A model generated the notes under the pieces. It ran no database searches, was not told where the DNA came from, and was given only the letters and a program-made list of their open reading frames with translations. This document shows, piece by piece, positions 10,634 to 48,318 of a stretch of DNA of 64,000 bases (positions within the stretch are counted from its first letter, which is position 1; each line of letters opens with the position of its first letter). Location: positions 62,001 to 126,000 of IMG/VR virus record IMGVR_UViG_3300020188_000808. The stretch is one strand, 5' to 3'. Position numbers and translations under genes: made by a program.

Positions 10634-10645
10634 ATTCTATACTCC

Positions 10646-11416: not shown

Positions 11417-11428
11417 TTATATTTCTCC

Positions 11429-12121: not shown

Positions 12122-12150
12122 TTTGTTTCCTTCGTTTGTATTTAGTCATA

Positions 12151-12891
12151 TTAACTGTACGATACTTTAACCATTCCGCCTGAGCCCCAATGGCCCCAAC
12201 AGCATGGTCCGCCACATGCAGTACCATTATATCCAGCGTCCCCTGGGTAAGGTTGAGCACAACCCCATCCGCAACCTGAACAAGTCATTGGATTACCGCA
12301 ATAATCTCGACCTTTTCTAGTATTTGCACCTTTTGGTGGTCCACTTACGTAGTCCCACATTTGATTGTGACAATATTGTGTAGCCATAGGATTATTTCTA
12401 CTATGACCTAATCTTAAATCGCCCTGCGTACCGCCCGAAATTTGTGAACATCCAAAGCAACAGTTATATGCATAATGTGCATGACAGTTTGTTCTACCTG
12501 TACATCCACCTCTAGCACACGTAGTTGCAATACCAGATCCTGATACAAAACTAGTTGAACCATCAATGCCTAAGCAATCTCTTTCACAACATGCTCCGTT
12601 ACCAGCCGCACAAATTGTGTATTGGCAACCAGCTATTGTGTTTACTGATCTAATTGCGTATGATCCGCCGCCTGCGTTCTGTGAACTAAACTGACAGCAA
12701 CATCCTCCTGCTCCTGCGGCTCCTGCACCCCATAGCTCAAATGTTACGTTAACAATGTCTGCTGGTACTGTCCAAAGACAACAGCAACCGCCATTATTAA
12801 TACCCCTATTATTGTTGTACACATAGAAGAACTTTGTAGGAGCCGAAGTTCCCGAAGTAGTATCTCCTAAAAGTGTTCTCAGGTCTGCCAT
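12151..12891 (-). CDS. Cys/Gly-rich fibre-tip (gp38-adhesin-like) protein
   Basis: 246 aa, 25 Cys by hand count. GGCCCLWTVP...WGAGAAGAGGCCC...GSGGMVKVSY. Confidence 0.65.
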   Translation of the reverse strand: MADLRTLLGDTTSGTSAPTKFFYVYNNNRGINNGGCCCLWTVPADIVNVTFELWGAGAAGAGGCCCQFSSQNAGGGSYAIRSVNTIAGCQYTICAAGNGACCERDCLGIDGSTSFVSGSGIATTCARGGCTGRTNCHAHYAYNCCFGCSQISGGTQGDLRLGHSRNNPMATQYCHNQMWDYVSGPPKGANTRKGRDYCGNPMTCSGCGWGCAQPYPGDAGYNGTACGGPCCWGHWGSGGMVKVSYS

Positions 12892-16600: not shown

Positions 16601-19600
16601 TTGTTTGCTTGAATATATTCAAATCCTTCATCAACTAAGAAATCTAAGTTAGCATAAATTTTGCCTCTAGTATCTGTGTATGCCGCATCAACTCTTCTAC
16701 CAACTTGTCCTACAACTGTTGGCTTAGTTCCTGCGCCGTTAACTTCATAATCAATCCAATCATGGATGTCTTGTACTAATAATTCTGCTGTTTCTACAGC
16801 CGCCGCAGTACCTGCTGGAACATTTGTATCTTGTGTACGTGTGTTTCCTGTAGCGATTGTTGCAACATCCATTGTAAATGCCGCTCCGCCGCCGCTACCT
16901 AATGCACTATCTGCAATAGTAATTGTGTCATTAACTGCATGTCCAGAACCTGCTGTAACTACTAGTACGCTTGTTACTGCTCCTGTTCCGTCAACTGCAA
17001 TATCAAAAGTTCCTACTACTCCTGTGCCACTAGATGATCCAGTTACACCTGTGTAGGTTCCTGTTGCTCTACTTGCGTCTGCGGCTCCAAATGTATCCAT
17101 TGTTAAGTGGCCACCTGCTGGTGTTTTAGTAACAGAATTATTTAAAATTGTATCACTAAGTATTGCCTTCATTCTTAAAATAGCAATTTTACTTAAATTT
17201 GCATCGTTAGTATCAGTTGGTCCAGCTGTTGCCGCACTAATTTCAGTACTACGTAATTCATCGCCAACAACTGCTGTATCTGCTGGAACAATAATCGGAA
17301 GTACTTCGTTGTATTGTCCTGTTTTAACAAAAATTGACACGTTTGGTTTAATCTTTTTAGCTAAACTATTTGTATTACCTGCTGTAATTGTATCTGTAAT
17401 TAATATTGTTAGTGCGTTAGCTGTTGTTTCAATGTTTGGTTCAGCAGTTTTAGTAGAATCAGTAATTTGTAAAACTGGTGTTGCTACGCTGTTTAATGTT
17501 GCGTAGTTTACTGCTGGCGCTAAGTTAGTAATAATGCTTGGTATTAAACTCATTGCATAATTAATTGCCGCATTGGTTTCGTCTTCTTGTCCTGATACAT
17601 AGTTTGCACCTGCAGGTGAAATATAAGATAACGCCGCTTCACGCATTCTTACGTTTCCGCCGTGTCTTAAATCCCATAGTAATGCATCTAAAATAATTCC
17701 AATGTCTCTACGACACTTAACTGCATCGTATGTAAATCCACTTGTAAACGGAGCAGTATTATTTGCAATACTGTGTGTAATAAACTCCATTGTTTGTTCT
17801 TGAATAAACTGTTTATTTCTTTCAATTAGATATGTTGCTTCAGGATTACGCGGACCTCTACGTACTTGTTCAGCCGCCCATCTTGTTGAAAAGAAAGGCT
17901 TATCAATTGTTACACCGTATGCTGGTGCAAATCCGTCTGTTCCGTTTGTACCAACATAATAAACTTGATCTAGTTGTCCAAAGTATGCCCATTCTGGAGC
18001 ATTTTCAGCTTCATTAACTTTTAATACTTGTCCTGCTTTACCAATTGGTAATCTAGTTGGACCTGCTCCACCATAGTAAACCAAATCACCAAGTGTTGTT
18101 AAGTTTCCTGATTCAACTCCACCGGATAATAAGTTCCAATATGCTCCAGCTACATCTTGATCTGGTCTGTTTTGTACTGATACTTCATCTGATGTGTGTG
18201 CTTGTACACAAATATAAGAGTTAACATTATTAATACCTCTAACAGTATCACCTAAATCATAGTATGTTGCGTCAGCCCATGCATCTTTCCAAGACATACC
18301 TTCATTAAGTCTATCCCAGTAAGTTACATTTGGTGGTCTATTTCCTGTTGTATCTTGAATACTAATATATGTGTAGCCACCTACACGTACAACATCACCT
18401 ACTTTATAAGCAGTTGCGTTGTTATAGTCGCCTTTTAAACTAAATCCTGTTGTAAATAAATCCCACGTTGCCGCATTGCCAAATGGAACAACGTTAGTGT
18501 TATTTGCTGTTGCAATATATGAGTAACCACCATAAGTTACAAAGTCACCAATTTGGTATGCAGTTGCATTTGACCAACTGTCTTCAAATTCTAATCCTGG
18601 TACAAATGTTTGCCACTGTGTTACTGTTTCAATAGTAGCAACATTAAATGTAAATCCTGTTCCTGCGCCGCCAATTGATCCTGGACCAACTGTGATTGTA
18701 TCGCCTGGAGCATGTCCTGCGCCACCTTTAACTACTACAAGTGTTACTGCACCTGTTCCGTCAACTGTTGCGTTAACTCTGTGTCCAGTACCAGTACCAC
18801 TAGTGGTACCTGTAATGTCATTGTATGTTCCTGCTATTCTGTCTGGATCAGCGGCACTAATTGTATCAACTGTTACAATATGTCCTGCGGCTGATACGTC
18901 ATCAGTTAAACTTGTTGCACTTGATGTATGTTCGTGTGTGTTAATCCAAAGACCGCCACCATACTTAACAACATCATTAAGTTTATATCTTGTATTAATT
19001 GCGTGTACTGATTTATATTCAATACCATTGTGTACAATATCCCATTTAGTTTGGTCTGACTCTAAACCATTAGAGGCTGTTGCCGCACTTTGGTGTCCTT
19101 CGTTACAAATATATAATTTGCCGCCATACTTAACAGTATCAGAAACTTTATACCTAGTTGCTACAGACCAATCTGTTTTCCAGTCCATACCTTTTGAGAA
19201 AATATCCCATTTCTCTATATCGGCTTCTAATCCGTCAGTGTCTGAATTTTGTGAGCTTGCCCCTGTATGTGCAGTATTACAAAGATATAAGTTGCCACCG
19301 TACTTAACAATATCGTTAACTTTATAAACTGTAGAAATAGTCCATACATTTTTCCAATTAAATCCTTCTGCGAATAAATCCCATTTAGCTTGATCAGTTT
19401 CTAAAATTCCAGCTAGACCAATTTCTATAGACCCGTCTGCAGATGAAGTATGTGCTGTATTACAAATATAGATATAACCGCCGTACTTGACAATATCATT
19501 CTGTTTATAATTATATCCAGAATTCCAATCACCTTGCCATTGAACGCCGTCAGTAAATAAGTTCCACTTTGTTGATTCGTCAGTAGTAAAATCAGCTGAG

Positions 19601-19731
19601 GCAGTATGCCCAACATTACAGAAGTAAGTTCTTCCGCCTTGTCTTACAATATCGTCTTTATAGTATAAAGCACCAGTTGTCCAAGTGCCTTTCCATACAA
19701 ATCTAATTCTACCTAGTTTAAATTCAGCCAT
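13609..19731 (-). CDS. Giant tail-fibre/virion structural protein
   Basis: 2040 aa. Many W....Y..GD.V.YGG..Y.C...H.S repeats, a predicted beta-helix region and C-terminal GGRVFFTSTDQDGNFRVG. Confidence 0.8.
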   Translation of the reverse strand: MAEFKLGRIRFVWKGTWTTGALYYKDDIVRQGGRTYFCNVGHTASADFTTDESTKWNLFTDGVQWQGDWNSGYNYKQNDIVKYGGYIYICNTAHTSSADGSIEIGLAGILETDQAKWDLFAEGFNWKNVWTISTVYKVNDIVKYGGNLYLCNTAHTGASSQNSDTDGLEADIEKWDIFSKGMDWKTDWSVATRYKVSDTVKYGGKLYICNEGHQSAATASNGLESDQTKWDIVHNGIEYKSVHAINTRYKLNDVVKYGGGLWINTHEHTSSATSLTDDVSAAGHIVTVDTISAADPDRIAGTYNDITGTTSGTGTGHRVNATVDGTGAVTLVVVKGGAGHAPGDTITVGPGSIGGAGTGFTFNVATIETVTQWQTFVPGLEFEDSWSNATAYQIGDFVTYGGYSYIATANNTNVVPFGNAATWDLFTTGFSLKGDYNNATAYKVGDVVRVGGYTYISIQDTTGNRPPNVTYWDRLNEGMSWKDAWADATYYDLGDTVRGINNVNSYICVQAHTSDEVSVQNRPDQDVAGAYWNLLSGGVESGNLTTLGDLVYYGGAGPTRLPIGKAGQVLKVNEAENAPEWAYFGQLDQVYYVGTNGTDGFAPAYGVTIDKPFFSTRWAAEQVRRGPRNPEATYLIERNKQFIQEQTMEFITHSIANNTAPFTSGFTYDAVKCRRDIGIILDALLWDLRHGGNVRMREAALSYISPAGANYVSGQEDETNAAINYAMSLIPSIITNLAPAVNYATLNSVATPVLQITDSTKTAEPNIETTANALTILITDTITAGNTNSLAKKIKPNVSIFVKTGQYNEVLPIIVPADTAVVGDELRSTEISAATAGPTDTNDANLSKIAILRMKAILSDTILNNSVTKTPAGGHLTMDTFGAADASRATGTYTGVTGSSSGTGVVGTFDIAVDGTGAVTSVLVVTAGSGHAVNDTITIADSALGSGGGAAFTMDVATIATGNTRTQDTNVPAGTAAAVETAELLVQDIHDWIDYEVNGAGTKPTVVGQVGRRVDAAYTDTRGKIYANLDFLVDEGFEYIQANNTKDFQEAMASASMQSKCKRDLKEYMKAVLWDLENFGNYYSTLVARWFSNAVNGSLLEDMFYLENGTGLRNCTVKGLTGTLSAPNAYGTKRPTAGAFCSLNPSWGPDDEDAWINTRSPYVQNVTTFGTRCVGMKVDGDIHNGGNDSIVANDFTQVLDEGIGAWVTNLGRAELVSVFSYYGHIGYLAEAGGKIRATNGNSSYGDFGTVAEGVDLTETAIKATVDNRSFDAVIGAVVTDNAGIIHHEYIHAGRDYVPANTTLSYSGDGFGITGLTPTVVTGGVMQIRLTGDDDTFGGADYKTATNTPQTGDTTSITISNTDASLSAAYTGMAVFLVGGTGAGQYGYIDTYNAGTKIANIKKYSDDTAGWDVTVPGQAVEAELDNTTQYSIEPRVNISAPGNDGSTATAQAVARAKVADGKISEVRIIHPGASYTTPPTVTFTDPNNTLDAPLEVFVADGVLAQPTFASRGTGWTAATATVSDAGFSKDITGVTFTANPFAYTLLTDNKEFIKDEVIAWIDNQIANAGSSTLWNAFTYDKSSWESNVGEYVDALAHDIKFGGTKESIKAARSYWIGVNTTLPGRQSQKLAAYEFMRTLLNSYILINTTYTTLQSPVVTTQTTNANNAEAGAITLAGELIDIINEGLINGLDSLPKDGGTGILNITVATHGLVDGDKVLINGVGGTTQLNGNSYYVKVIDGDTLQLYLDVYRLFPAVLTLGSPYIVNGTIAYGAGYRDAKQDGKYIQVEGMESIPQAGANVEFASLPGTFFKLVSVTQLTGSSPYSALLQISPNMALDDAPIHGDNIEMRIRYSQCRLTGHDYLDIGTGGFTTTNYPGTPTTPADPNDEAVEGGGGRVFFTSTDQDGNFRVGDLFSVEQATGIATLNADAFSISGLQELQLGAVALGGAGATVNEFSTDGTFTANSDSIVPTQKAIKTYITSQIGGGASELNVNSVTAGVINIQGNTITTTTGVLINTTAQMHFTGGVSGSPVAMQQFILS

Positions 19732-19772
19732 TTTTTCTTCCTACATGCATGTTATATGTATTTATCATTTGT

Positions 19773-22700
19773 TTATATTCCCCCCGGACCGTAGCCATTT
19801 TCGCCACCATCATAGAAGCCATCACTTCCTTCAAAGTCGTCTTGACTTTCAGTTAGCATCATTGTATCCATATTGCCGTTAAAGTATGCTTGTGCCATCA
19901 TCATACCACTTGGTATCTTAGTAAAGTGCATAGGTACCGGAATATTAATAGCTAATCCACCTGTATTTGATATGTGATTTAAATCACTAAATTTACAAGT
20001 ACCTGCTGTAACTGCGTTTGCCGCTACGTTTGAACCACCACCACTAATTCTACTCTGTAAATAAGCCGCAATAGCCTTCTGTGTTGGTACAATGTTATTA
20101 CTATTAGCAACAAATGTTTGTTCTTTTGAGAATTCTCTAATTACAGCATTTGTTCCACCTAATATAAACGCACCAAGTCTAAGTTCGTCTAGTCCTTCTA
20201 GGTTAAACTGTGAAGCATTAATAGTAACAATACCTGTACTTTGCTCAACTTTAAATAATTCGCCAACTCTAAAGTTACCATCTTGGTCTGTAGAAGCGTA
20301 GAATACTCTACCACCGTTGTACTCTTGAGCTTCATATGATTGCTCTGGTGGATTAATATTACCATACCCGTCTGTATATAACAATGGATATGCAGTATCT
20401 GCAAAGTTACCTGTACCAATGTCTAAGAAATCATGGAATGTTAATCGTACCTGACTATAGTTCTGTCTAATATTTGCCGGAGTAGCATGTTCTGGTGATT
20501 CTTGCACTCCCATATTAGGACTAATTGTAAGTTTTGCAACTGCATTAGGAGCCGCACCTGACAATATTGTAGCAGTACCAACTTTATAAATTACATCATT
20601 AATACCATCAACTCTAAAGTTATCACCCGGACTTGGAATTAGTGTTAAATCACTAACAATAATTTCTCCGCCAATTTGGAATAAATCTGCATAGCCGTCA
20701 CCGGTAATTGTTACTTGGTTAAATTTAGTATACAATGCACCTCTGTTTGTAAAGTTAGGTTGTCCTAACACTCTATTTTTAATTCTAACTTGATACGTTA
20801 CTTCTGTAGTTTTTTGTGTATCATGAATATGCAATGAGGGTGGTACCCCTACATTATAACCACTACCTGGATCAGTCATTGTAAATGATTCAATGCGTCC
20901 TGTTGTTACAGGGAACGCTCTCATTTTTGCTTTAGCACCATATTTAATTGCCGCTAAGTTTGCTGTTGCCGTTGCAGGACTAATCATAAATCTTGGTCCA
21001 CTTGTTAGTGTCATTGGACTAATCTTTGGTCTATAGTTTTGTGCATTTAATAAAGGTATAGCAGGTTTACTATTCCAAACATGACCACCATCACCGTATA
21101 AAATATCTCCTTGCACACTGATTGCCATAAACAATCCATCACTATATGCAAGACCAAATACTCGTGTTCCAATAAAGTTTGGATCTGAAACAATTAACCA
21201 TTCTGAGTTTAATGCTCCAGTGTCTTTGGCTGTAAAGCTAATGTAGAATGTACTGTTTAATCCAAACGAAGCACTAGTAGTACCTGCTACGGAATTAATC
21301 ATTGTAGTTGAAGGATCAAATACAAATGTAGCAGTTCCGTTTGGTTGACATGCCGCTACAAATCTTCCATTACCAAATGCAAACCCTGTTACGTTATATG
21401 TTGTTGGACAAACTCTAGTTGCAGTAGTCCAACTTTGGCCATCGTTAATACTTTCAATAGCGGTTCCGTCTTCTTTGACAATCATCCATTTACCATTTCC
21501 GTAAGCTAAGAATTTTTGTCCTGTTCCAAATCCTGTATTAGTATAAGTCCAAGCAGTTCCGTCTGTTGTAGTAATTGCAATTTCATCACTATCGTCTGCT
21601 ATTGCTATAACTGTGTGCGAAGTTGTTGAATATGATCCTTCAACTATACTTACATAGTTGTGTGCATTAATAGAGTATGCTGTTGAACCCCATGCTGTAC
21701 CAGCAGTTGACAAGTTAGCTTTGCTACCATTGCCTAGTGCAATAAAGTATTTTAATTTACCTTTACATTTGACAATACAATTTGGTCTTACAAAGTCAGC
21801 ATCAATGATCGCCGCTGTCCATTGATCGCCTGCTTCGTTACTGTAAATAGCTTTGTCATCTCCTGTTGAAGGAAATGCAACCATTGTTGTTCCTGTTGCT
21901 GAGAAACAATCCTGCCAAGCAGTTGCTCCGTATCCTGTAGCAAAACCTTCTTCTGCATATGGAGGAGCTTCAACTTCCATTCTTGATTCAATTCTATAAG
22001 TTGTTGATCCGTCTAGTGTTGTTGTAATTGGCCAACCTGGAACTAAATGGTCCCAACCACGTTTGCCATCTGACTCGCGTAGTACATTAATCTTTTTAGT
22101 TGTAGTAAAGTATTCGTCAATTATTCCAAACTGTCCAACGCCTTCACCTTCTTCAATGATAATCTTCATTGATTCGCTAATTGCGTTTACTTGAAAAGTT
22201 AAGTTTCCGCCGCCAAAATTACCAATGTCACTATCAAGTATAGTAATAGTGTCGCCAACTCTATGACTGTGGCCACCGTTTGTAATTGTAACAGTTGGAG
22301 TTCCTGTACCGTCAATAGTAATTGTAAACGTACCTACAGTATCTTTTGCAAACGGGTTATCTGATGTTGCAGTAACTCCTGTATATGTGTACGGAGCATC
22401 AAGAACGTTACCAACCCAACCTGGATTTGCACCCGGTAATCCTGTAATCGCTGTTATTGCTCTACCAACATAATATTCTGGTCCGTTGTTATCTGACTGT
22501 GCAATAGTAATTGAAATACTATCACCGCCTTGTGCAGAGTTTCTTATACCTGTAATATGTCCTCTACCACCTGGTGTACTTGAATCACCTGGATCAAGTA
22601 ATCTAACTTCACTAATTGCACCGTTTCTTACATCTGTTGATGTATTATCAACTCCAACACCACTACCTGAACCTGTAATTGCAAAGTTTGCATTAGTATA

Positions 22701-25097
22701 TTCTTCACCTGCGTGTGTAAATCCTAGTGCAAAAATTTGGTTAGCGTTACTGTAAACTGTTGGTGCTTTTGCATTATAATATCTGTTGTTAATAGTTGCT
22801 GTAATTGGAGTTTCACTTACTAATTCTCCTTCAGCAAACGATCCATATTTTCCGTATGAGTTGTTACCATTAGTAGCACGTAGCTTTCCACCTGCTGTAC
22901 AATAATAACCAATATGACAATAATATGTAAACACAGATACAAGCTCTGCTCTACCGTCTTTGTTAGCCCATACACCAATACCATCACTAATAACTTGTGT
23001 AAAGTCGTTAGCAACAATTGATTTGTTTCCGCTGTTGTGCAAAGCACCGTCAATTTTTAATCCAACACAAGCAGTACCAATAGTTGTTACGTTTTGTACA
23101 TATGTTGATTTAGATGTAATCCACACACTTGAGTCGCCTGGTCCTGAACCTGGATCAAGTGCAACAAATGCTCCACTTGCTGGAACTTGTGCTCCATAAG
23201 TATCTGGAGTTCCTAGTGTACCTGTTAGTCCTTCAAGAGTCATATTTCTAATTCCACAACCATTTCTAACTTGGAACATATCTTGACTTTCAGAACCTTC
23301 TTTTGGTCTAACTGTAGTACTTCTTAATTCGTCGCCAACAACAGCAACGCCTGCTGGAACTTTAATAGGAAGAACTTCTTCGTAAATCCCTGTGCTAACA
23401 AAAATTGTTGCTGGTGCTCTATTAGCTTGATCTGCTAAAATATATTGTGTGGCATATTTAATTGTTCTAAACGGACTTGTTGGTGCTAATCCAGCACCAG
23501 ACACATCATGGCCCGAAGTTGCAACATAGAATACTTTAGCTACTTGTCCTAATGCTTCCCATTGTGCGGAATCGTCAATAACTTTTATTGCATCTCCACT
23601 ATTACCAATAGCAAGTCTTTCGTGAGTAGTTCCGTTGTGTGTTCTAAGATCACCTCTGTATTCCATTACGTTGCCAGGAGCACCTTGAATATGTTTAACC
23701 CAGTAACTATTTGTAGAATCTAGTGCTGGTTCAACCAATGATGAATCGTCAGCTTCGTGTGCTTGAATACATTTCCAAGTAGTACCTGCTTGAACTACAA
23801 TATCACCTAATACATAATCAGCTGTTTCAATCCATTCACCTCTGTATGCTACTCCAGTTATTACTAACTGCCAATACATTGAAACACTACCGTTTAAACT
23901 TCTAGTCTCACCTGGATCGTAGTATCCTTCGCTTTCAGGATCTAATGCATCTGGTTTTTGGTTAAGACTGTCTTGTACAGCAATATAAACAAAGCCACCG
24001 TTTCTAACTACTTCACCTGTTTTGTATGCTGTTGAAGCTGACCATTCGCCCTTCATTGCATAACCGGTAATTACTAATTCCCAATCATATAATCCTTGTA
24101 AACTTTCACCTTCGTAGAAAACACCAGTTACACTTGGAGGACTACCTAAGTTGTTTGTCATTGATGTATAGGTATATCCACCATAACGTACAATGTCACC
24201 TGGTTGGTAACTTGTAGAATTACTCCACTCTGCTTCAAATCCTAATCCTGGTAACCAAAGATCAAATTTACTTTCGTCAAATGTTGCTAATGATGCATGA
24301 AATTCTTTACATCTCCACATTGATGGTCCGTATCTAACTAAATCACCAACTTTATATCTTGTTCCTGAAGAGTCGCCGTTGTCTTGCCAAAACCCTGTGT
24401 ACTCAATTCCGTGTAGTACAACGTCCCATTTAGTAAGATCGTCTTCTAATCCTAAAAGTGCAGTTTCTGCAGAGGTATGTCCTTCATTACATCTATAAAC
24501 AATAGCACCATATTTTACAACATCGTCATCTTTGTATCTTGTATTAGGAGCCCAGTCAATTCTATAATTATTACCTTGAAATACAGTTTCCCATTTGTCT
24601 TGGTCTTGTTCAAGTCCAGCAATAGTAGAACTAGAAGTATGTTCTTGAATAGCTTTGTAAACAATTCCACCGTAACGTACAACGTCACCAATTCTATATC
24701 TTGTTAATGCTGACCATTGTGCGGACCAATTAGGCGTTGATGCATATGCTAAAAGTTTATCAACATCATCTGTAATACCATCTGTAGCACTACTTCCTGA
24801 AACGTGTTCGTCAGTTACACGATAAATTACACCATTATATTTGACTAAATCGTTAATTCTATATCTAGTTTCAATTTGCCAATTGCCTCTCCATTGGCGA
24901 CCGTCTGCCATCAGCAACCATTTAGGTGTTGCCGCAGTTAAATCTGTTTCAAAACTAGTTTGATCTGATAAGTGACCAACCATACAAACATAAACGTTAC
25001 CGCCATGTCTAATAATATCATCTTTGATATATGTTGCGCCTGCAAGCCAAACGTTTTTCCAAGTATATCTTATTCGTGCTAGATTAAATTCAGCCAT
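19773..25097 (-). CDS. Giant tail-fibre/virion structural protein, paralog of 13609..19731
   Basis: 1774 aa. Collinear N-terminus (MAEFNLARIRYTWK), repeats and C-terminal GGRVFYASTDQDGNFRVG. Confidence 0.8.
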   Translation of the reverse strand: MAEFNLARIRYTWKNVWLAGATYIKDDIIRHGGNVYVCMVGHLSDQTSFETDLTAATPKWLLMADGRQWRGNWQIETRYRINDLVKYNGVIYRVTDEHVSGSSATDGITDDVDKLLAYASTPNWSAQWSALTRYRIGDVVRYGGIVYKAIQEHTSSSTIAGLEQDQDKWETVFQGNNYRIDWAPNTRYKDDDVVKYGAIVYRCNEGHTSAETALLGLEDDLTKWDVVLHGIEYTGFWQDNGDSSGTRYKVGDLVRYGPSMWRCKEFHASLATFDESKFDLWLPGLGFEAEWSNSTSYQPGDIVRYGGYTYTSMTNNLGSPPSVTGVFYEGESLQGLYDWELVITGYAMKGEWSASTAYKTGEVVRNGGFVYIAVQDSLNQKPDALDPESEGYYDPGETRSLNGSVSMYWQLVITGVAYRGEWIETADYVLGDIVVQAGTTWKCIQAHEADDSSLVEPALDSTNSYWVKHIQGAPGNVMEYRGDLRTHNGTTHERLAIGNSGDAIKVIDDSAQWEALGQVAKVFYVATSGHDVSGAGLAPTSPFRTIKYATQYILADQANRAPATIFVSTGIYEEVLPIKVPAGVAVVGDELRSTTVRPKEGSESQDMFQVRNGCGIRNMTLEGLTGTLGTPDTYGAQVPASGAFVALDPGSGPGDSSVWITSKSTYVQNVTTIGTACVGLKIDGALHNSGNKSIVANDFTQVISDGIGVWANKDGRAELVSVFTYYCHIGYYCTAGGKLRATNGNNSYGKYGSFAEGELVSETPITATINNRYYNAKAPTVYSNANQIFALGFTHAGEEYTNANFAITGSGSGVGVDNTSTDVRNGAISEVRLLDPGDSSTPGGRGHITGIRNSAQGGDSISITIAQSDNNGPEYYVGRAITAITGLPGANPGWVGNVLDAPYTYTGVTATSDNPFAKDTVGTFTITIDGTGTPTVTITNGGHSHRVGDTITILDSDIGNFGGGNLTFQVNAISESMKIIIEEGEGVGQFGIIDEYFTTTKKINVLRESDGKRGWDHLVPGWPITTTLDGSTTYRIESRMEVEAPPYAEEGFATGYGATAWQDCFSATGTTMVAFPSTGDDKAIYSNEAGDQWTAAIIDADFVRPNCIVKCKGKLKYFIALGNGSKANLSTAGTAWGSTAYSINAHNYVSIVEGSYSTTSHTVIAIADDSDEIAITTTDGTAWTYTNTGFGTGQKFLAYGNGKWMIVKEDGTAIESINDGQSWTTATRVCPTTYNVTGFAFGNGRFVAACQPNGTATFVFDPSTTMINSVAGTTSASFGLNSTFYISFTAKDTGALNSEWLIVSDPNFIGTRVFGLAYSDGLFMAISVQGDILYGDGGHVWNSKPAIPLLNAQNYRPKISPMTLTSGPRFMISPATATANLAAIKYGAKAKMRAFPVTTGRIESFTMTDPGSGYNVGVPPSLHIHDTQKTTEVTYQVRIKNRVLGQPNFTNRGALYTKFNQVTITGDGYADLFQIGGEIIVSDLTLIPSPGDNFRVDGINDVIYKVGTATILSGAAPNAVAKLTISPNMGVQESPEHATPANIRQNYSQVRLTFHDFLDIGTGNFADTAYPLLYTDGYGNINPPEQSYEAQEYNGGRVFYASTDQDGNFRVGELFKVEQSTGIVTINASQFNLEGLDELRLGAFILGGTNAVIREFSKEQTFVANSNNIVPTQKAIAAYLQSRISGGGSNVAANAVTAGTCKFSDLNHISNTGGLAINIPVPMHFTKIPSGMMMAQAYFNGNMDTMMLTESQDDFEGSDGFYDGGENGYGPGGI

Positions 25098-41816: not shown

Positions 41817-44462
41817 TTATGCCGCTCCTCCTAATGCATCATTCATCTGTTTTCCACCTCTAGTTTGTTTTTTAAGTTCTTCTAACATAAGTGCGTTAGT
41901 ACTATTTAACGAAACTAGCATAGAAGCACTTTTATCTTGGCTTTCATTTGATACATTTAATACTTTGGTAAATGATGCTTTGGTTTCTGCGTCCATGTTT
42001 TTGTATTCTTCGTTATATTCGGCTATTTGTTTAATTAATTCTTTAATATTTTTGGTAACTTGTTTTAAATTGGCATCGTCCATAGCTTCAACATATGCCG
42101 CAATACCTTGTAATCCATCTCCAATATTTTTAAGTCCAGCGGCATCAACATCAGCAAAAGCCTCAAGTTTTTTAGCCATAACATCTAAATTGCCATCATT
42201 ACCAAAAAAGCTACTAAAGAATTTACCGGCGCTGTCTAAAAATCCGTTACCTGTAAATGCACTAACACCTTTTTGTAAAGATTGTAATGCTGGGCCTAGG
42301 TCGCTCATAGTTTTTGGATTAATTCCTTCAAACGATTTAACACCATCTGATAATCCTTCTAATGCTCCGTCACTAATAAACGATGCAACAAGTCCGCCTT
42401 TGGCAAGTCCCATCATATTATCAGTTAATGGCCCTAATGATTTACCAACATCAAGTAATTTCTTAGCATCCATGCCTTCAAACTTTTTAACGCCGTCTGC
42501 AAGTGTGCCTACTCCGCTAGTAATCGAATCTATCAATGCGGCAATTCCGTATCCAGCTACTCCAATTCCAGCAAACGCTAGACCAATTGCAAGTACACCT
42601 GGTACTGCTAGGTTAATTGGACCTGCTAGTGCGCCAATAGCCGCCGCAACGCCAAGTAATACAGCCGCGGCACCAATGCCGCCCCACATTAATGCTTTGC
42701 CCCACTCTTCAAATTTTGTAATTATTGGGCCTAATGATTCAAACATTGATCCCATAAGTGTTCCACCTGAGCCACCTGCATCGTCGCCTGCTTCGGCGCC
42801 TGGTGAGCCTGGTGATGCTTTAGTCTTAGGCTTACCTCCAAACAAAAATCTAATTGGATCAATTAAGTATTTTGTTACTAGTTCTCCAATACTAAGTTTG
42901 CCCCAATCATCTTTGAAATTTTGAAACATATTTCCAAGGTTGTCAATTAGTATTCCTAATCGATCTGTAAATCCTTGAATTGATGTTTGTACCTTGTCAC
43001 TCTCAAACCACGTTGTTAGTTTTGACATTGCTGATTGTACTTTAGTAAATACTCCAGAATCAAGTAACGCAACCATAATTTTACTACGTACTTTCTCTAT
43101 TGCACTATCAAAGTTTGTTAGTGTTTTATTTTTAGCTGTGGTTGCATCTAGTTGTTTCTGCTGTGCATCGCTTAGTTTACCACCTACTGTACCAGCTTTT
43201 GCTAAACTAAGTGCGGCGTCATATGCAGTTACACCCATTGCGGCATATGTACCTATATTTTCTTTTTCTTGTTTAACTAACGCCTGTGCTTGAGCTATTT
43301 GCTCGTTTGTTTGTGCGGCAAACTCATCGGCTGTTATTGATCCAGATCGTAATCCTCTAGCCATTTCAGCAAACTGTGGATTTGTACGCAACAAACCTTC
43401 TGTAAATGGAGTAAGAGCTACACCGTTAGTTGCAACTAATTCAGTCATTGCATCTTTCATTTCTGGACTCATATTTTTCATCATTGCCAAAGAATTTTGT
43501 AAATTCGTTTTGACTCCTTCATCCATATTTGAAATTAATGCCTGTAATCTTTTATCAGTTGCTTGTGATTGTAATTCTTCTGCGGCTTGCTTTCTTGTCA
43601 TACCTGTAACTTTAGCAAGTTGATCAAGTTGCATAATATAATTCTGTGTGCCTTTAGCTAACTGTCTGTCAGTCATTGTGCCTAAACGGCCTTGAACTTT
43701 TTGTAATTCAATATAGTCAGCTGTAAATTCAGTTACATCTTCCATTGTCATACCCAATGCTGAAAACTGTGCTTGTGATTGCTGTACATATTTTGAAATT
43801 TTAGAAAATCTATCAGCACCTGTAGTTGCACCGCCAAACGCTAGTGCTAACATTGATGAATTTTCTTGGATTGATCCAGCTAGTGTAGCCATACTTAATC
43901 CTGCTTCAGCGGCACGTCTTTGCATAGAGAATAAATCGTCTCCAAAATCAATACCACCATTTGACAGTGATCTGTACATGTCAATTTGATTGTCAAGGAC
44001 ATTTAACATAGTTTGTCCAAATTGTCCTAAAACACCACCAACTATTGGAAACTGACTTACTAGTCCTGTAACATGCTGTCCAAAATCACTAATTCTGTTG
44101 CCACCGGCTACTAATTCTTTTCCTAGCCCGCCTACCGCTGATATAGTGTTTCCAACACCACTTAATAATCCACCACTATACCTATCTAATGTTTTAGCAA
44201 AGTTTTTAGTTTTTTGGGTAAGACTAGTAGTAGCTTTGGTTTGTTTTTGGGTAGCTTCGGTACCTTCTTGTGTGGCTTTGTTGTCTTTTTGTGCTATTCC
44301 AATACCTTTGGTCTTAACAGCATTGGCCATTTTTTCAGTAGCTGACCCACCGCCAGTACTGCCTTTTTCCATTAGTTGGACTAGTCGTTGGAGAGTAGCT
44401 TCACTAGCCGCATTGCTAGTAACTCCGTCCATTTGACCGCCTCTGTATGTGATTTCTGCCAT
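41817..44462 (-). CDS. Tape measure protein
   Basis: 881 aa, Ala/Gly/Leu-rich helical with hydrophobic stretches. Adjacent to the gp26-like gene. Confidence 0.8.
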   Translation of the reverse strand: MAEITYRGGQMDGVTSNAASEATLQRLVQLMEKGSTGGGSATEKMANAVKTKGIGIAQKDNKATQEGTEATQKQTKATTSLTQKTKNFAKTLDRYSGGLLSGVGNTISAVGGLGKELVAGGNRISDFGQHVTGLVSQFPIVGGVLGQFGQTMLNVLDNQIDMYRSLSNGGIDFGDDLFSMQRRAAEAGLSMATLAGSIQENSSMLALAFGGATTGADRFSKISKYVQQSQAQFSALGMTMEDVTEFTADYIELQKVQGRLGTMTDRQLAKGTQNYIMQLDQLAKVTGMTRKQAAEELQSQATDKRLQALISNMDEGVKTNLQNSLAMMKNMSPEMKDAMTELVATNGVALTPFTEGLLRTNPQFAEMARGLRSGSITADEFAAQTNEQIAQAQALVKQEKENIGTYAAMGVTAYDAALSLAKAGTVGGKLSDAQQKQLDATTAKNKTLTNFDSAIEKVRSKIMVALLDSGVFTKVQSAMSKLTTWFESDKVQTSIQGFTDRLGILIDNLGNMFQNFKDDWGKLSIGELVTKYLIDPIRFLFGGKPKTKASPGSPGAEAGDDAGGSGGTLMGSMFESLGPIITKFEEWGKALMWGGIGAAAVLLGVAAAIGALAGPINLAVPGVLAIGLAFAGIGVAGYGIAALIDSITSGVGTLADGVKKFEGMDAKKLLDVGKSLGPLTDNMMGLAKGGLVASFISDGALEGLSDGVKSFEGINPKTMSDLGPALQSLQKGVSAFTGNGFLDSAGKFFSSFFGNDGNLDVMAKKLEAFADVDAAGLKNIGDGLQGIAAYVEAMDDANLKQVTKNIKELIKQIAEYNEEYKNMDAETKASFTKVLNVSNESQDKSASMLVSLNSTNALMLEELKKQTRGGKQMNDALGGAA

Positions 44463-44538
44463 TTATTAAGTACCTATATAATGGAAGTTCATAAATATAC
44501 TATATGAACAACACTTATTATTTATCCGGAGAAAAACC

Positions 44539-45405
44539 ATGCCAGAAATAGAAAGAAGTGGAGCGAATCCACTACAAAAATATTTTAGGCAACCTAAAAT
44601 ATATATCAAATTACCCAGTGGTGGACAATTTTACCCTGAGGGAGCATTAGAACTAACAGAAAACGGTGAGTTGCCTGTTTATGCAATGACAGCAAGAGAT
44701 GAATTATCATTCAAAACTCCTGATGCATTACTTAACGGACAATCAACTGTTGATGTAATTCAAAGTTGCATTCCTAACATTAAGAATGCCTGGGCAATGC
44801 CTACTGTTGATATTGATACAGTACTGGTTGCTATTAGAATTGCTACCTACGGTGAAAAATTAGACCTAACAACTAGAGTTCCAAACACACAAGGGTTAGA
44901 AAGATCATTTGGTCTTGACCTAAGAATGGTGTTAGACAAATTTGCGGCTGTAGAGTTTAATGACACTATCACTATTGACGAGTTTACAATTAAATTGCGT
45001 CCTCAAACTTATAAAGAGTTTACTAGAGTTGCAACAAAAACATTTGAAGAACAACGTATTGCACAAGTAATCCAAGAAGACGATATGGATGAACAAAAGA
45101 AACTAGAAATCTTTAATACTGCATTTGAACGTTTAACTGCTATTACTATTGATATGGTTATTGATGGAGTAGTGTCTGTTCAAGTTGGTGACGATGTAGT
45201 AACTGATAGAAATCATATTGTTCAGTTTATTCAAAACGCAGATAAAAAGTTTTATGCTGGCGTTGTTGAAAATATGGAAACACAAAAAAATAAGTTTAGT
45301 TTAAAACCTATTGAAATTGAATCCACTGAAGAAGAAATTGCGGCAGGTGCTCCTAAAAAATGGGACATGCCTGTAACATTTGATCAATCAAATTTTTTCG
45401 CATAA
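44539..45405 (+). CDS. gp26: Baseplate hub assembly protein / tail chaperone, gp26-like
   Basis: 288 aa. MTARDELSFKTPDALLNG...DIDTVLVAIRIATYGE. Ends NFFA. Confidence 0.8.
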   Translation: MPEIERSGANPLQKYFRQPKIYIKLPSGGQFYPEGALELTENGELPVYAMTARDELSFKTPDALLNGQSTVDVIQSCIPNIKNAWAMPTVDIDTVLVAIRIATYGEKLDLTTRVPNTQGLERSFGLDLRMVLDKFAAVEFNDTITIDEFTIKLRPQTYKEFTRVATKTFEEQRIAQVIQEDDMDEQKKLEIFNTAFERLTAITIDMVIDGVVSVQVGDDVVTDRNHIVQFIQNADKKFYAGVVENMETQKNKFSLKPIEIESTEEEIAAGAPKKWDMPVTFDQSNFFA

Positions 45406-45435
45406 GGATAGCTTCTCAGTCTCTGGAGGATATCC
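45393..45435 (+). other. Predicted -1 ribosomal frameshift signal
   Basis: In-frame T TTT TTC heptamer (45393-45399), 6-nt spacer, ~12-bp hairpin GGATA...TATCC (45406-45435). Confidence 0.65.
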
Positions 45436-45629
45436 TAAAAGAAGTTGACAACTTAGAAAACGAGACCAAAAATTTCAAGATGGAACTATCTCGTATAGTT
45501 TGGTATATGAGAGGTAGCGTTAGTCTTGAGGAGATCTATCAGGTTGGTCCCGAAGATAGAGAAATATTTTCTAAACTTATTAAAGAGAATCTTGAAACTG
45601 CTAAGAAAACTGGTCAACCTTTTTGGTAG
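45399..45629 (+). CDS. gp51-like ORF in the -1 frame (frameshift extension of gp26-like gene)
   Basis: Open 45384-45629 with no ATG until 45480. RIRIASQSLEDILKEVD...WYMRGSVSLEEIY...PFW*. Confidence 0.6.
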   Translation, partial: RIRIASQSLEDILKEVDNLENETKNFKMELSRIVWYMRGSVSLEEIYQVGPEDREIFSKLIKENLETAKKTGQPFW

Positions 45630-45635
45630 GATCTA

Positions 45636-47792
45636 TTACTTTGCTATTAACATTTGACGTACTTGTTTTTGTACGCCTGCTTTACTAATTCTATCTACTA
45701 GATCTGGTAAGTTAACTCCGCTACTCTGTTGTGCAGTTCCTCCACCTAAACTTTGTTTAACACTATCAACATTTACACCAGACTTTTTAATTTTTTGTGC
45801 TAGTGTTGCAACATTGCTTTGTGTTGGTGTAGCTTGTGCTGATCCTTGTTTAGCTTGTGCTTTAGCTTGTGCTGAAGCTGGAACTTTTGGTTTCTTTGCA
45901 TAATCTCCGCCTGTTGCTTTTGCTGGTTTATCTGGAGTACCTGTAGGATAACTTAGGGGAGTTTTGCCCGGAGTAGGTGAGCTAGATGGCTCTTGTTTGT
46001 CATTTTTAGTTGATGCTTGTGCTTGTGTAGCTGTAGCTTTATCACCGCTTGTTGACGCTGTATCTGCGTCTGTGGCACCATCTGTAGGTGCTTTAGTTAC
46101 TTCATCTGGACTAATTGGTGCTTGTGTTGATCCTGCAATACTGCTTATCTGATCATTAGTTAACCCTGCACCTGATAATATATTTACAATGCTACCAGAA
46201 TCAGTTGGTTCGCCCATCTTCTTCCAATCTTTATTAAGTTTGTTAGCAGTAACTTTATTACCTACATCTTTGGCACCTTGCTTAACTGCACCAACTGCAC
46301 TTTTAGCACCTTGAGCAACTGCACCTGCGGCTCTACTTGCAACTTTGCCTACACCACGTTTTAGTTTAGCACCAAGTGTGTTAGGATTGTTTAATGGTAG
46401 TTCACCTTGTGCAGGTTCTGCTTCTTGTAAGTATTCGTTAAATGCAGTTTCATAATCAATTGATTCTGCTTTGTCGCCTACTGCTCCAAAGTCTGAAAGT
46501 TTTTGACTCTTGTCAAAGTTTTTATCTACAGGTGTTGCATCACTTCCGCCTTTAAGATCTAATTCAAGTTGTTTCTTTTCTTCTGGATCAATTGGTTTGA
46601 CTTTGTGCATTTCTTTGTTGTTGTCGTCAACAGTTTGTAGAGCACCTTGTGCCGCCGCACCAATTGCGCCACCGGCGCCACTTAATGTTTCAATTGCTTT
46701 GTCAGCATTGTCAAGCACAGCAATAGCCGCATCCAGTTGATCACCTGTTAGTGCATCTTTAGGAATGTCTGCTATAGTTTTTGCAAGTGCAGTTAGGTCT
46801 GCGTTTGCTTGTTGTGTTGTTGACATAAATCCGTGCAACTTACCTGCCGCTTCGTAATATTCAGGACTAAAAACTTTTGCATTTGATGCCGCATCTGATA
46901 GTGCTTTATATTGTGCAACTTGATCAGCAGTCATAGTTAAATCATAATTGTAAAAGAAGCCGTTGATGTTACCAGACATTTTTAAATTACGTGCACCGTC
47001 AAGTACACCTGCATCAAAACCTGCATCTGCTACTGCACCATCTACTGCCGCAGTAAAGTTGGCTTTTTCAAAAGCATCCATCATAGCGTCTGCTTCTGCT
47101 TCACTGCCCGTTGCAATGTTATCGACCATATTATCAGTTAGCCCTTGAATTGCCAAACCAGCAAGAGCACCATATGCCGCTGTTTTAACTGACTTACCAA
47201 CTGCTGTTGAAAGTTTTTCACCTTGTAATAGATCTTTTGTTGAACGCAGTACTAAACCTGCGGCCGCACCACCTAATGGTCCGCCTGCAAAGGCCGCAAC
47301 AGTTGTTAAAATACCAACTGCTAATGAAGCCTTACCTGGATTTGCTTTTGCCCAATCACTGACAGCTTTTACACCTGCAACAATTTTACCGTCACTTGAT
47401 CCAATTTTCTTTTTAAGTTCTTCAAACTTTGCATCAGCATTTTTAATTGGGCCTGCGTTTTGTGCTAGTTTGCCCAGCTCATTAATCTTTGCATCAACTT
47501 TTTTAGCTAGGTCAACGGGTAATTTAGCCGCCGCTCCAACTGCTGAACCTGCTTTACCAAGTGCAGTTTTGTTATCTCCACTGGCCATTGCTGTTTCTTC
47601 AGCGCCTTTGAAGATTGCTTGTATTTGATCTGATGTTAATTCTGCTTCTGCTAGTTTTGCATAAGACTCAACTAGTGGCCAAAGCTCTAATTCAAAGCGT
47701 GTTAGATAATTTTGTTGTGCTTCGTTTAGATCTTGCCAACCCTCGTTTAAAATTGTTTGGGTTTTGCTTGTAATTACTTCGTTGAGTTTCAT
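45636..47792 (-). CDS. Putative internal head/ejection protein
   Basis: 718 aa. N-terminal MKLNEVIT...LNE, Ala/Gly-rich, one hydrophobic hairpin. Confidence 0.55.
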   Translation of the reverse strand: MKLNEVITSKTQTILNEGWQDLNEAQQNYLTRFELELWPLVESYAKLAEAELTSDQIQAIFKGAEETAMASGDNKTALGKAGSAVGAAAKLPVDLAKKVDAKINELGKLAQNAGPIKNADAKFEELKKKIGSSDGKIVAGVKAVSDWAKANPGKASLAVGILTTVAAFAGGPLGGAAAGLVLRSTKDLLQGEKLSTAVGKSVKTAAYGALAGLAIQGLTDNMVDNIATGSEAEADAMMDAFEKANFTAAVDGAVADAGFDAGVLDGARNLKMSGNINGFFYNYDLTMTADQVAQYKALSDAASNAKVFSPEYYEAAGKLHGFMSTTQQANADLTALAKTIADIPKDALTGDQLDAAIAVLDNADKAIETLSGAGGAIGAAAQGALQTVDDNNKEMHKVKPIDPEEKKQLELDLKGGSDATPVDKNFDKSQKLSDFGAVGDKAESIDYETAFNEYLQEAEPAQGELPLNNPNTLGAKLKRGVGKVASRAAGAVAQGAKSAVGAVKQGAKDVGNKVTANKLNKDWKKMGEPTDSGSIVNILSGAGLTNDQISSIAGSTQAPISPDEVTKAPTDGATDADTASTSGDKATATQAQASTKNDKQEPSSSPTPGKTPLSYPTGTPDKPAKATGGDYAKKPKVPASAQAKAQAKQGSAQATPTQSNVATLAQKIKKSGVNVDSVKQSLGGGTAQQSSGVNLPDLVDRISKAGVQKQVRQMLIAK

Positions 47793-47802
47793 CAGTCAGT
47801 CC

Positions 47803-48318
47803 TTAGAGTAGTTTTGCTAATTCTGCTTTGTCCTGAGGACTAAGTGCATCAATTTCTTTTTGTAAATCTGCAGGAATTCCTCCTTGGGCACTTGCTGATC
47901 CAAATTTATCACCTAAACTAGCTGGACTACTTGCAGTTGCCGCTTGTCCTGCCGCACCTTTGAAAGAATCTTGTGCAATTCCTTGTAACAAATCGTCTAC
48001 TTGTTTAGGAGTCATTTGTCCTTGTACACCTTGCATACGCTTTGTTGGAAGTTTTTGTTTTTGTAAAAAGTCCATAACTTGATCTGCTGTTGGTTGTTTA
48101 GCATTACCACCAGTTTGACCCATATAGCCTCTATATTGTGTGAATATCTCTTTTGCTCTGGCGTTTTGATCTACTTTACCTGACATGCCAGCCGCTGTGC
48201 CTTTAGCGCCAACGGCGCCCGCTACTTTTGCGCCAGCTTTTCTTGCTAGGTTACCTAGGGCACTTCCGCCAGGAGCCTCAGAGACTGTTGTTTCTGTAAC
48301 TATTTGATTGATTTTCAT
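47803..48318 (-). CDS. Putative internal head protein
   Basis: 171 aa. N-terminal MKINQIVTE. Shares modules with 45636..47792. Late promoter at 48340-48346. Confidence 0.55.
   Translation of the reverse strand: MKINQIVTETTVSEAPGGSALGNLARKAGAKVAGAVGAKGTAAGMSGKVDQNARAKEIFTQYRGYMGQTGGNAKQPTADQVMDFLQKQKLPTKRMQGVQGQMTPKQVDDLLQGIAQDSFKGAAGQAATASSPASLGDKFGSASAQGGIPADLQKEIDALSPQDKAELAKLL

What the first reader, a model, noticed from the sequence alone, without database searches (positions are those of the whole stretch)
45384..45629. Programmed -1 frameshift joining gp26-like and gp51-like ORFs
Seen: three codons before the stop, the in-frame heptamer T TTT TTC (overlapping A AAT TTT), a 6-nt spacer and a ~12-bp hairpin (GGAUA-G-CUUC-U-CAG-UCU-CUG-GAGG-A-UAUCC). 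The -1 frame is closed by TGA at 45381-45383, open to 45629, and has no ATG for 32 codons. Slippage gives ~363 aa (287+76). Known: lambda G/GT-type tail chaperones next to the tape measure gene use -1 frameshifts. T4 26 and 51 are normally annotated as separate genes. Inference: the T4-like gp26/gp51 pair here is a G/GT-equivalent chaperone system.
Basis: partly seen in the sequence, partly recalled or inferred. Interest (0 to 1): 0.7.

Follow-up and report, generated by a model that had tools for sequence, protein, structure and literature searches.

The report
Conserved frameshift in phage hub-chaperone gene
An uncultured salt-marsh jumbo phage very probably makes a short and a long form of its T4 gp26/gp51-type tail-hub assembly chaperone from one gene by a programmed -1 ribosomal slip; the signal is real and deeply conserved, but citing papers indicate this kind of recoding is already described for T4-like phages.

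Summary
ORF 44539-45405 (288 aa, Pfam T4_baseplate, the gp26/gp51 family) ends AAT TTT TTC GCA TAA. The in-frame heptamer T_TTT_TTC (45393-45399) is followed by a 5-6 nt spacer and a 13-bp hairpin (45405-45436). The -1 frame stays open to 45629 and has no ATG, GTG or TTG before 45480.

Comparative evidence for -1 programmed frameshifting is strong:
- All 80 related IMG/VR loci keep the heptamer, with its codon choice frozen.
- The -1 frame evolves as coding sequence from the slip site onward.
- No start codon is conserved.
- Homologues exist in which body and extension form one in-frame ORF, colinear with the predicted junction.
- Genomes that carry such a long gene also carry a separate short paralogue, and its heptamer is lost or vestigial.

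The same site occurs in 121Q, PA5oct, Atu_ph07, Phosso, Serratia phage BF, cyanophage Syn9 and pelagiphage HTVC008M. T4 instead has two paralogous genes, 26 (short) and 51 (long).

The tape-measure identity of the neighbouring gene and any binding remain unproven. Vladimirov, Gautam and Davidson (2022), as summarised by two citing papers, already describe these genes as the tail assembly chaperones of T4-like phages. This is therefore a new, unannotated member of a known kind.

The parts
44539..45405 (+). 0-frame ORF giving the short product (288 aa), a gp26/gp51-family (T4_baseplate) hub assembly protein. It ends ..FDQSNFFA then TAA.
   Evidence: More than 7,400 homologues (E <= 0.001); all seven whose sequences were read end ..[QH][SA]NFF[AGV].
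45393..45399 (+). Slippery heptamer T_TTT_TTC in X_XXY_YYZ register.
   Evidence: Present in all 80 related loci. Codons are fixed at AAT 40/40, TTT 41/41 and TTC 41/41, while other conserved Phe columns use TTT:TTC at about 3:1.
45376..45407 (+). 32-nt island of near-identity around the slip site.
   Evidence: In four RNA-library runs, short contigs that differ from the window elsewhere (presumably co-occurring relatives) match it at >=95% only across 45376-45407/9.
45405..45436 (+). 13-bp stem-loop 5-6 nt after the heptamer, the likely frameshift stimulator.
   Evidence: The outer stem is 92.5% paired across 38 distinct relatives, with compensatory changes in 3 of 6 pairs; 0 of 500 shuffles reach the observed covariation score. 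It is weak or absent in about 12 of 44 lineages.
45399..45629 (+). -1 frame extension of 76 codons plus TAG. It encodes a conserved helical C-terminal domain (R-x-[RK]-I-L..EIL..WYMRG..EDRE..N.E..KK...PF[FW]).
   Evidence: Codon-position diversity is 0.37/0.20/0.55 for codons 1-27 and 0.34/0.19/0.54 for codons 28-76.
44539..45629 (+). Whole recoded gene. The predicted long product is 363 aa (residues 1-287 in frame 0, then 76 in frame -1).
   Evidence: In-frame homologues of 319-351 aa are colinear across the junction.
41817..44462 (-). Divergent neighbour, an 881-aa virion structural protein lying between the portal gene and this gene. It is a putative tape measure protein by inference only.
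   Evidence: phrog_14121 'virion structural protein'. The same synteny holds in PA5oct, Phosso, 121Q, BF and L087/L092. No significant similarity to T4 gp29.

Best explanation
Gene 44539-45629 encodes two proteins with a common N-terminus.

Most ribosomes terminate at TAA 45403 and make the 288-aa short form. A fraction slip back one base on U_UUU_UUC (two tRNA-Phe re-pair from UUU-UUC to UUU-UUU), probably while held by the hairpin that starts 5-6 nt downstream. They then read CGC at 45399 and add a 76-aa helical domain, giving a 363-aa long form with the junction ..SNFF-RIRIAS...

The protein belongs to the T4 gp26/gp51 family of baseplate-hub assembly chaperones. The short form corresponds to gp26 (domain only). 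The long form corresponds to gp51 (domain plus C-terminal tail).

By analogy with lambda G/GT, the shared body would act on the tape measure and hub, and the rarer long form would add a second contact through its tail at a ratio fixed by the slip frequency.

Shown: the signals, their conservation, coding constraint in the -1 frame from the slip site, and the existence of in-frame long homologues. Inferred: the ribosomal mechanism, the efficiency, and the chaperone role with its partners.
For: 1. All 80 IMG/VR relatives (52-100% aa identity) have A[AG]T TTT TTC one codon before the stop. All 76 loci that reach far enough have the -1 frame open to exactly +224 nt.
2. Heptamer codons are invariant while synonymous choice varies at other conserved Phe and Asn columns.
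3. The -1 frame shows the coding pattern pos3 > pos1 > pos2 from the first codon after the slip. Five lineages have no ATG, GTG or TTG before codon 37, which lies inside the conserved WYMRG motif. The window's ATG (codon 28) is Leu, Tyr, His or Ser in relatives.
4. 16 proteins of 319-351 aa carry the extension in frame after a PF12322 body. Their junctions read ..S-x-x-F-R-x-[KR]-[IL]-[IL], colinear with SNFF|RIRIA. BLASTP of the window ORF against one of them ends exactly at the junction.
5. In the three contexts examined, the long gene is the second of a tandem pair. Its short partner has a lost or vestigial heptamer (TTT ATG; TTC TTT; or TTT TTC with a -1 stop one codon later).
6. The window's genome and those of Syn9, HTVC008M, PA5oct, 121Q and Atu_ph07 each have a single PF12322 gene. 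Those six, plus Phosso and Serratia phage BF (whose whole genomes were not searched), all have the in-frame U_UUU_UUY and a -1 extension. T4 has two genes and no heptamer (TTC TTT).
7. The hairpin shows compensatory changes. Independent strong hairpins follow the site in PA5oct (z = -3.25) and Atu_ph07 (z = -3.06).
8. T4 gp26 and gp51 are listed as hub assembly chaperones (PMC3004832). The TAC interpretation of T4-like phages comes from citing papers.
Against: - There is no protein-level evidence.
- The window's hairpin is only modestly better than shuffles (z about -1.7). A hairpin is absent in about a quarter of the marine lineages and in Syn9, HTVC008M and BF.
- Lineages with a TGA stop, including Atu_ph07 and Phosso, have an ATG overlapping the stop (ATGA) at -1 codon 2. 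Coupled re-initiation could contribute there.
- Homology of the extension to the gp51 tail is weak (P = 5e-4, probability 31-40%). A search of the T4 genome with the extension profile found nothing.
- The chaperone role and the tape-measure identity of the neighbour are untested. No fold similarity to solved chaperones was found.
Confidence: 0.88

Rival explanations
1. Transcriptional slippage. RNA polymerase adds one U in the T6 run (45393-45398), so a subset of mRNAs carries body and extension in one frame. The ribosome does not slip.
For: The site is a homopolymer run. The title of Vladimirov et al. [quoted passage not shown] HTVC008M has seven T.
Against: Productive slippage in bacteria usually needs runs of about 8-9 or more (own knowledge). 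Here the run is fixed at exactly six T followed by an invariant C, in the X_XXY_YYZ register of the 0 frame. A downstream hairpin at 5-6 nt with covariation fits ribosomal pausing. RNA-library contigs show no indel at the run, but contigs cannot reveal a minority species. PMC10885494 explains the 'other mechanism' as two separate genes.
Confidence: 0.06
2. The downstream ORF is an independent small gene ('gp51-like'). It would be translated by its own initiation or by termination-reinitiation at the stop of the upstream gene, as current GenBank annotations imply.
For: Public records annotate it as a separate CDS (Syn9, 121Q, BF, Phosso, Atu_ph07). Lineages with a TGA stop have an ATGA overlap. 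AAGGA lies at 45404-45408.
Against: In the window there is no ATG, GTG or TTG between 45384 and 45480, and codon 2 is ATA. The 27 codons before the ATG are under coding constraint and are conserved. Several lineages have no start before the middle of the domain. In BF the conserved -1 peptide RSRLLISEPEEV lies upstream of the annotated ATG and overlaps the last 12 codons of the upstream gene. Separate genes would not explain the frozen heptamer. In-frame fusions exist.
Confidence: 0.04
3. Artefact or decay: an assembly indel in a T run, or a gene split by a recent frameshift mutation.
For: Homopolymer runs are error-prone. The window is a metagenomic assembly.
Against: The same frame arrangement occurs in 80 independent contigs, in isolate genomes from eight phage groups and in four RNA-library assemblies. 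A stop codon sits at a conserved position and both frames are under selection.
Confidence: 0.01

Closest known systems
Bacteriophage T4 gp26 and gp51 (baseplate hub assembly chaperones; Pfam PF12322 T4_baseplate)
   Same: Same protein family. gp26 ends ..KEFFELL at the position where the window's short form ends ..SNFFA. gp51 continues with a tail (F-K-L-L..P-D-E-I..P-x-E-R..L-I-E-K) that aligns to the -1 extension. Short and long forms therefore both exist.
   Different: T4 makes them from two full-length paralogous genes on opposite strands, with no slippery site (TTC TTT). The window's protein lacks the CxxC pairs of gp26/gp51. Its extension is about 25 residues longer than the gp51 tail. 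Tail homology is only weakly supported.
'T4 gp26-like' plus 'T4 gp51-like' gene pair of T4-like cyanophages (e.g. Syn9 BSV9_gp12/gp13) and of pelagiphage HTVC008M
   Same: Same architecture: a single PF12322 gene ending ..SFF[G], U_UUU_UUC or U_UUU_UUU at the stop, and a 63-65-aa -1 extension. In Syn9 a large gene follows on the same strand.
   Different: About 240-aa bodies. No detectable downstream hairpin. Too distant for tblastn to connect with the window. Annotated as two separate genes.
Lambda G/GT and other tail assembly chaperones made by -1 frameshifting (Xu, Hendrix and Duda 2004; applied to T4-like phages by Vladimirov, Gautam and Davidson 2022)
   Same: Two products share an N-terminus. 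The slip lies a few codons before the stop, the C-terminal extension is small, and the gene sits in the tail module beside a long structural protein. Two separate genes can replace the frameshift.
   Different: No sequence or fold similarity was detected. The gene diverges from the putative tape measure gene instead of preceding it. The partners are unknown.
Tandem short plus long PF12322 paralogues in uncultured marine phages (L087, L091, L092)
   Same: Same synteny (portal, ~800-aa protein, then hub genes). The short paralogue is the closest to the window's ORF (29% identity, E = 1e-48). The long paralogue carries the same extension domain.
   Different: The extension is in frame on a second, CxxC-bearing paralogue. 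There is no functional slip site.

Membership tests
Pfam PF12322 T4_baseplate (T4 gp26/gp51 family) | Match to the family HMM above the gathering score | tested here: met
   40.8 bits against a cut-off of 24.5, E = 2.5e-10, residues 48-257. phrog_150 baseplate hub E = 5.7e-14. The only such gene in the 268-kb genome record.
Pfam PF12322 T4_baseplate (T4 gp26/gp51 family) | C-terminal tail of the gp51 type (the newer Pfam PF28602 on gp51 homologues) | tested here: inconclusive
   hhalign of the extension against the gp51 family places it at the C-terminal end, P = 5.3e-4, probability 31%. Full-length long forms against gp51 are colinear, E = 2.9e-4, probability 40%. PF28602 is not in the local library. 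The T4 genome search with the extension profile was empty.
Canonical -1 programmed ribosomal frameshift site | X_XXY_YYZ heptamer in the 0 frame | tested here: met
   U_UUU_UUC at 45393-45399. Invariant in relatives, with frozen synonymous positions.
Canonical -1 programmed ribosomal frameshift site | Stimulatory RNA structure 5-9 nt downstream | tested here: met
   13-bp hairpin at 45405-45436. Covariation in the clade. Not universal across lineages.
Canonical -1 programmed ribosomal frameshift site | -1 ORF that overlaps the 0-frame end, lacks its own start and is under coding selection from the slip site | tested here: met
Canonical -1 programmed ribosomal frameshift site | Trans-frame protein observed | not testable with these tools
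   Only in-frame natural homologues support it.
Lambda G/GT-type tail assembly chaperones | Two products with a common N-terminus, made by a slip near the 3' end | tested here: met
   Predicted products of 288 and 363 aa. Two-gene equivalents exist in T4 and in L087/L091/L092.
Lambda G/GT-type tail assembly chaperones | Gene immediately upstream of, and co-oriented with, the tape measure gene | tested here: not met
   The adjacent 881-aa gene is on the opposite strand (divergent). It has no Pfam family and no significant similarity to T4 gp29. The co-oriented order is seen in Syn9 only.
Lambda G/GT-type tail assembly chaperones | Sequence or fold similarity to known chaperones | tested here: not met
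   A profile of the long forms found nothing in PDB sequences. The AF2 model (pLDDT 90) found no match by Foldseek and only generic helical hairpins by VIA-align.
Lambda G/GT-type tail assembly chaperones | Binds the tape measure (body) and the tail tube (extension); absent from virions | not testable with these tools
   Literature on T4 only: gp51 is required but absent from the particle, and gp26 and gp51 are listed as hub assembly chaperones (PMC3004832).

The most novel reading that the evidence does not exclude
One recoded gene may be the ancestral and prevailing way of making the gp26 (short) and gp51 (long) pair across the whole T4 supergroup, from cyanophages and pelagiphages to 270-490-kb jumbo phages. 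T4's divergent genes 26 and 51 and the tandem pairs of some marine phages would then be independent duplications that replaced the frameshift, with the slip site decaying afterwards. That would be a natural three-way experiment on swapping recoding for gene duplication. It would also mean that the 'gp51-like' mini-genes and unannotated gaps in many phage records are mis-annotated. How much of this is already in Vladimirov et al. 2022 could not be checked.
Probability: 0.5. Interest if true: 0.5.

Novelty: new member of a known kind. Interest (0 to 1): 0.35.

Why it matters
- **Annotation.** It corrects records. In the window and in 121Q, PA5oct, Atu_ph07, Phosso, BF and Syn9, the long product is missing or is split into a 'hypothetical' or 'gp51-like' mini-gene.
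- **Tractable test.** It offers a clean comparative case in which the need for a short and a long chaperone form is met by frameshifting, by tandem paralogues, or by divergent paralogues. The long-unexplained 'catalytic' role of T4 gp51 can then be tested as the minor long isoform of a tail assembly chaperone.
- **Benchmark.** The invariant U_UUU_UUC with a variable stimulator is a useful test set for frameshift predictors.

Tried and rejected
- hhalign of the long-form or extension alignments against single T4 gp51 or gp26 sequences gave no significant or meaningful alignment.
- A search of the whole T4 genome with the extension profile found nothing.
- Pfam and PHROGs gave no family for the 76-aa extension. 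tblastn of the extension against phage records found only Atu_ph07 and Phosso.
- PF28602 is not available locally.
- PDB searches by sequence and by fold gave nothing specific.
- The 881-aa neighbour against T4 gp29 gave no significant similarity. Its homologues in PA5oct, Phosso and L087 have no PHROG.
- The tail tube gene was not securely found in the genome record. PF06841 gave a sub-threshold hit in a 459-aa ORF outside the window, so an extension-tube test was not set up.
- Complex prediction of the N-terminal 450 aa of the 881-aa protein with the short form gave no answer (score 0.00). It is evidence neither for nor against binding.
- Metatranscriptome runs are held only as contigs. They cannot show a minority of slipped transcripts or prove transcription.
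- Vladimirov et al. 2022 is not held in the library. Its content is known only through two citing papers.
- P0027 (383 aa) looked like a fusion, but it is an assembly duplication of the C-terminal third.

Full report
**Context**

The window is bases 62001-126000 of a 267,783-bp IMG/VR virus record with an estimated completeness of 75%. Salt-marsh metagenomes and metatranscriptomes hold it. It is a distant member of the T4 supergroup:
- a T4-type portal (phrog_213);
- a gp23-like major head protein (phrog_138);
- gp46/47-like nuclease subunits;
- a gp5-like hub/lysozyme protein.

By tblastn of the gene in question, the nearest cultured relatives are jumbo phages. They are Sinorhizobium phage Phosso (36% identity), Agrobacterium phage Atu_ph07, Pseudomonas phage PA5oct, and the Serratia BF and E. 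coli 121Q groups.

ORF 44539-45405 (288 aa) is a member of Pfam T4_baseplate, the T4 gp26/gp51 family (E = 2.5e-10), and of phrog_150 'baseplate hub'.

- Its 0 frame ends GAT CAA TCA AAT TTT TTC GCA TAA, so T_TTT_TTC at 45393-45399 is in the X_XXY_YYZ register.
- The -1 frame is closed at 45381-45383 and then open to TAG at 45627-45629.
- The -1 frame contains no ATG, GTG or TTG before 45480.
- A 13-bp hairpin occupies 45405-45436, 5-6 nt after the heptamer.
- Against dinucleotide shuffles the hairpin is only modest (z about -1.7). It is nevertheless the most stable 40-nt window in the gene.

**The slip site is conserved as nucleotides**

- All 80 related IMG/VR loci (52-100% protein identity) end A[AG]T TTT TTC Nnn STOP.
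- In all 76 loci that extend far enough, the -1 frame runs to exactly +224 nt past the stop.
- Among 41 distinct sequences, other conserved Phe columns use TTT and TTC at about 3:1, and Asn columns use AAT and AAC at 1-2:1.
- The slip-site codons, by contrast, are AAT 40/40, TTT 41/41 and TTC 41/41.
- In the RNA-library assemblies, short contigs that differ from the window elsewhere (presumably co-occurring relatives) match it only across 45376-45407.

**The -1 frame is coding from the slip site, and no start is conserved**

- Codon-position diversity over the 27 codons between the slip and the window's ATG is 0.37/0.20/0.55.
- That is the same pattern as in the rest of the extension, 0.34/0.19/0.54.
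- The window's Met is Leu, Tyr, His or Ser in relatives.
- Five lineages have no ATG, GTG or TTG before the Met of the conserved WYMRG motif.
- In Serratia phage BF the 0-frame stop lies 12 codons after the heptamer. The conserved -1 peptide RSRLLISEPEEV overlaps those codons, upstream of the annotated start of the 'downstream gene'.

There is one caveat. Where the 0-frame stop is TGA, as in some marine lineages, Atu_ph07 and Phosso, the -1 frame has an ATG overlapping it. Coupled re-initiation cannot be excluded there. The window has ATA at that position.

**Natural in-frame fusions exist**

An exhaustive phmmer search with the 76-aa extension found 134 representatives. Most are 40-100-aa stand-alone gene calls. 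Sixteen are proteins of 319-351 aa with the domain at the C-terminus.

- These carry PF12322 in the body.
- They read ..LD-x-S-x-x-F-R-x-[KR]-[IL]-[IL].. across the junction, colinear with the predicted FDQSNFF|RIRIA.
- BLASTP of the window ORF against one of them stops exactly at ..SNFF / ..SELF.

**Frameshift and gene duplication are alternatives**

The three genomic contexts examined for these long proteins all show the same arrangement. Portal and an ~800-aa protein lie on one strand. On the other strand lie a short PF12322 gene (287-296 aa) followed by the long one.

- The short paralogue is the closer relative of the window's ORF (E = 1e-48 against 6e-24).
- The short paralogues end SNFMS, SNFFTR or TSFFND.
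- Their heptamer is lost (TTT ATG; TTC TTT) or leads to a stop after one codon.

Conversely, the window's genome, Syn9, HTVC008M, PA5oct, 121Q and Atu_ph07 each have a single PF12322 gene. Those six, plus Phosso and BF (whose whole genomes were not searched), all have an in-frame U_UUU_UUY with a -1 extension.

T4 has two genes. Gene 26 gives a 208-aa protein ending ..KEFFELL, with the FF coded TTC TTT. Gene 51 gives a 249-aa protein. Both match the whole PF12322 profile, and they lie on opposite strands.

**Relation to gp51**

- The gp51 tail (..[35 protein letters not shown]) resembles the extension by eye.
- Profile-profile comparison aligns the long forms to the gp51 family colinearly over the full length (E = 2.9e-4, probability 40%).
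- It aligns the extension alone to the C-terminal end of gp51 (P = 5.3e-4).
- The Syn9 extension (..LETYY..NLMPWEKEIY..) looks intermediate, and RefSeq calls that ORF 'T4 gp51-like'.

I regard homology of the extension to the gp51 tail as probable, not proven.

**The stimulator**

- In the marine clade the outer stem (AGGAUN/NAUCCU) is 92.5% paired, with compensatory changes in 3 of 6 pairs.
- It exceeds all 500 shuffles and all slid controls.
- 19 of 44 distinct sequences have their post-slip window in the lowest 5% of their own gene. About 12 have no hairpin.
- PA5oct and Atu_ph07 have strong, unrelated hairpins (z about -3). Syn9, HTVC008M and BF have none.

The heptamer is therefore the constant element and the stimulator is variable.

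**Function**

T4 gp26 and gp51 are listed as hub assembly chaperones. gp51 is required for baseplate assembly but is absent from the final particle (PMC3004832).

Two papers summarise Vladimirov, Gautam and Davidson (Virology 2022), which I could not read:
- some T4-like phages carry a short and a long fused TAC gene instead of frameshifting (PMC10885494);
- poly-T slippery sequences occur in TAC-N genes of T4-like phages (PMC12846349).

An AF2 model of a long form is confident (pLDDT 90). It matches only phage 'baseplate hub / hub assembly' proteins in BFVD. Nothing specific turns up in the PDB, so there is no structural link to lambda-type chaperones.

The 881-aa divergent neighbour has tape-measure-like position, size and composition. 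It has no demonstrated homology to T4 gp29.

**Verdict**

This is a real, deeply conserved -1 programmed frameshift that produces the long (gp51-like) isoform of a gp26/gp51-family hub assembly chaperone. Confidence is about 0.88 for the recoding and about 0.6 for the G/GT-like division of labour.

It is a new and unannotated member of a known kind. The modest added value is its extension to jumbo phages, and the three-state pattern of frameshift, tandem paralogues and divergent paralogues.

Noticed in passing
window 45611: All four RNA-library assemblies read A instead of T here. The change is synonymous in the -1 frame (GGT to GGA, Gly), consistent with that frame being coding.
   Followed up: partly
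window 44463-44538: The 76-nt divergent intergenic region between the 881-aa gene and the hub-chaperone gene contains CATAAATA, one mismatch from the T4 late-promoter motif TATAAATA. In run X3 the contigs break at 44492 and 44532, as expected for two divergent transcripts. Sigma-70-type scans found nothing above chance.
   Followed up: partly
window 4747-6558 (-): A 603-aa Nol-like carbamoyltransferase (phrog_1601, E = 2.6e-161) sits among tail-fibre-like genes. It may be an auxiliary or glycan-modifying gene.
   Followed up: no
window 8434-12891 (-): An array of alternating paralogues: three phrog_4205 proteins (246-268 aa) interleaved with two phrog_9740 proteins that have weak 'tail fiber assembly' matches. 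It looks like a duplicated fibre/chaperone cassette.
   Followed up: no
window 13609-25097 (-): Two giant ORFs of 2040 and 1774 aa lie back to back. They were not characterised.
   Followed up: no
window 45636-48318 (-): Convergent 718-aa and 171-aa Ala/Gly/Lys/Gln-rich low-complexity proteins have no Pfam or PHROG family. The 718-aa gene ends 7 nt after the stop of the -1 extension.
   Followed up: no
L087 and L092 (and NCBI GCA_015689235.1 contig): In the relatives with tandem short and long hub genes, the T4-type portal gene carries an intein (Portal_T4 - Intein_splicing - Portal_T4), and SegE-like GIY-YIG homing endonuclease genes lie nearby.
   Followed up: no
P0027 (ENA metagenome protein, 383 aa): An apparent long homologue is an assembly artefact. 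The last ~95 residues of the protein are repeated in tandem.
   Followed up: yes
L003 3852-4076 (PA5oct), L001 3828-3930 (Atu_ph07): In the RefSeq records the -1 extension is wholly unannotated in PA5oct. In Atu_ph07 it is truncated to a 40-aa 'hypothetical protein'.
   Followed up: yes
window 44539-45402 versus Atu_ph07, PA5oct, 121Q, T4: The window's clade has lost both CxxC pairs (putative zinc ribbons) that gp26, gp51, the jumbo-phage homologues and the in-frame long paralogues retain.
   Followed up: partly
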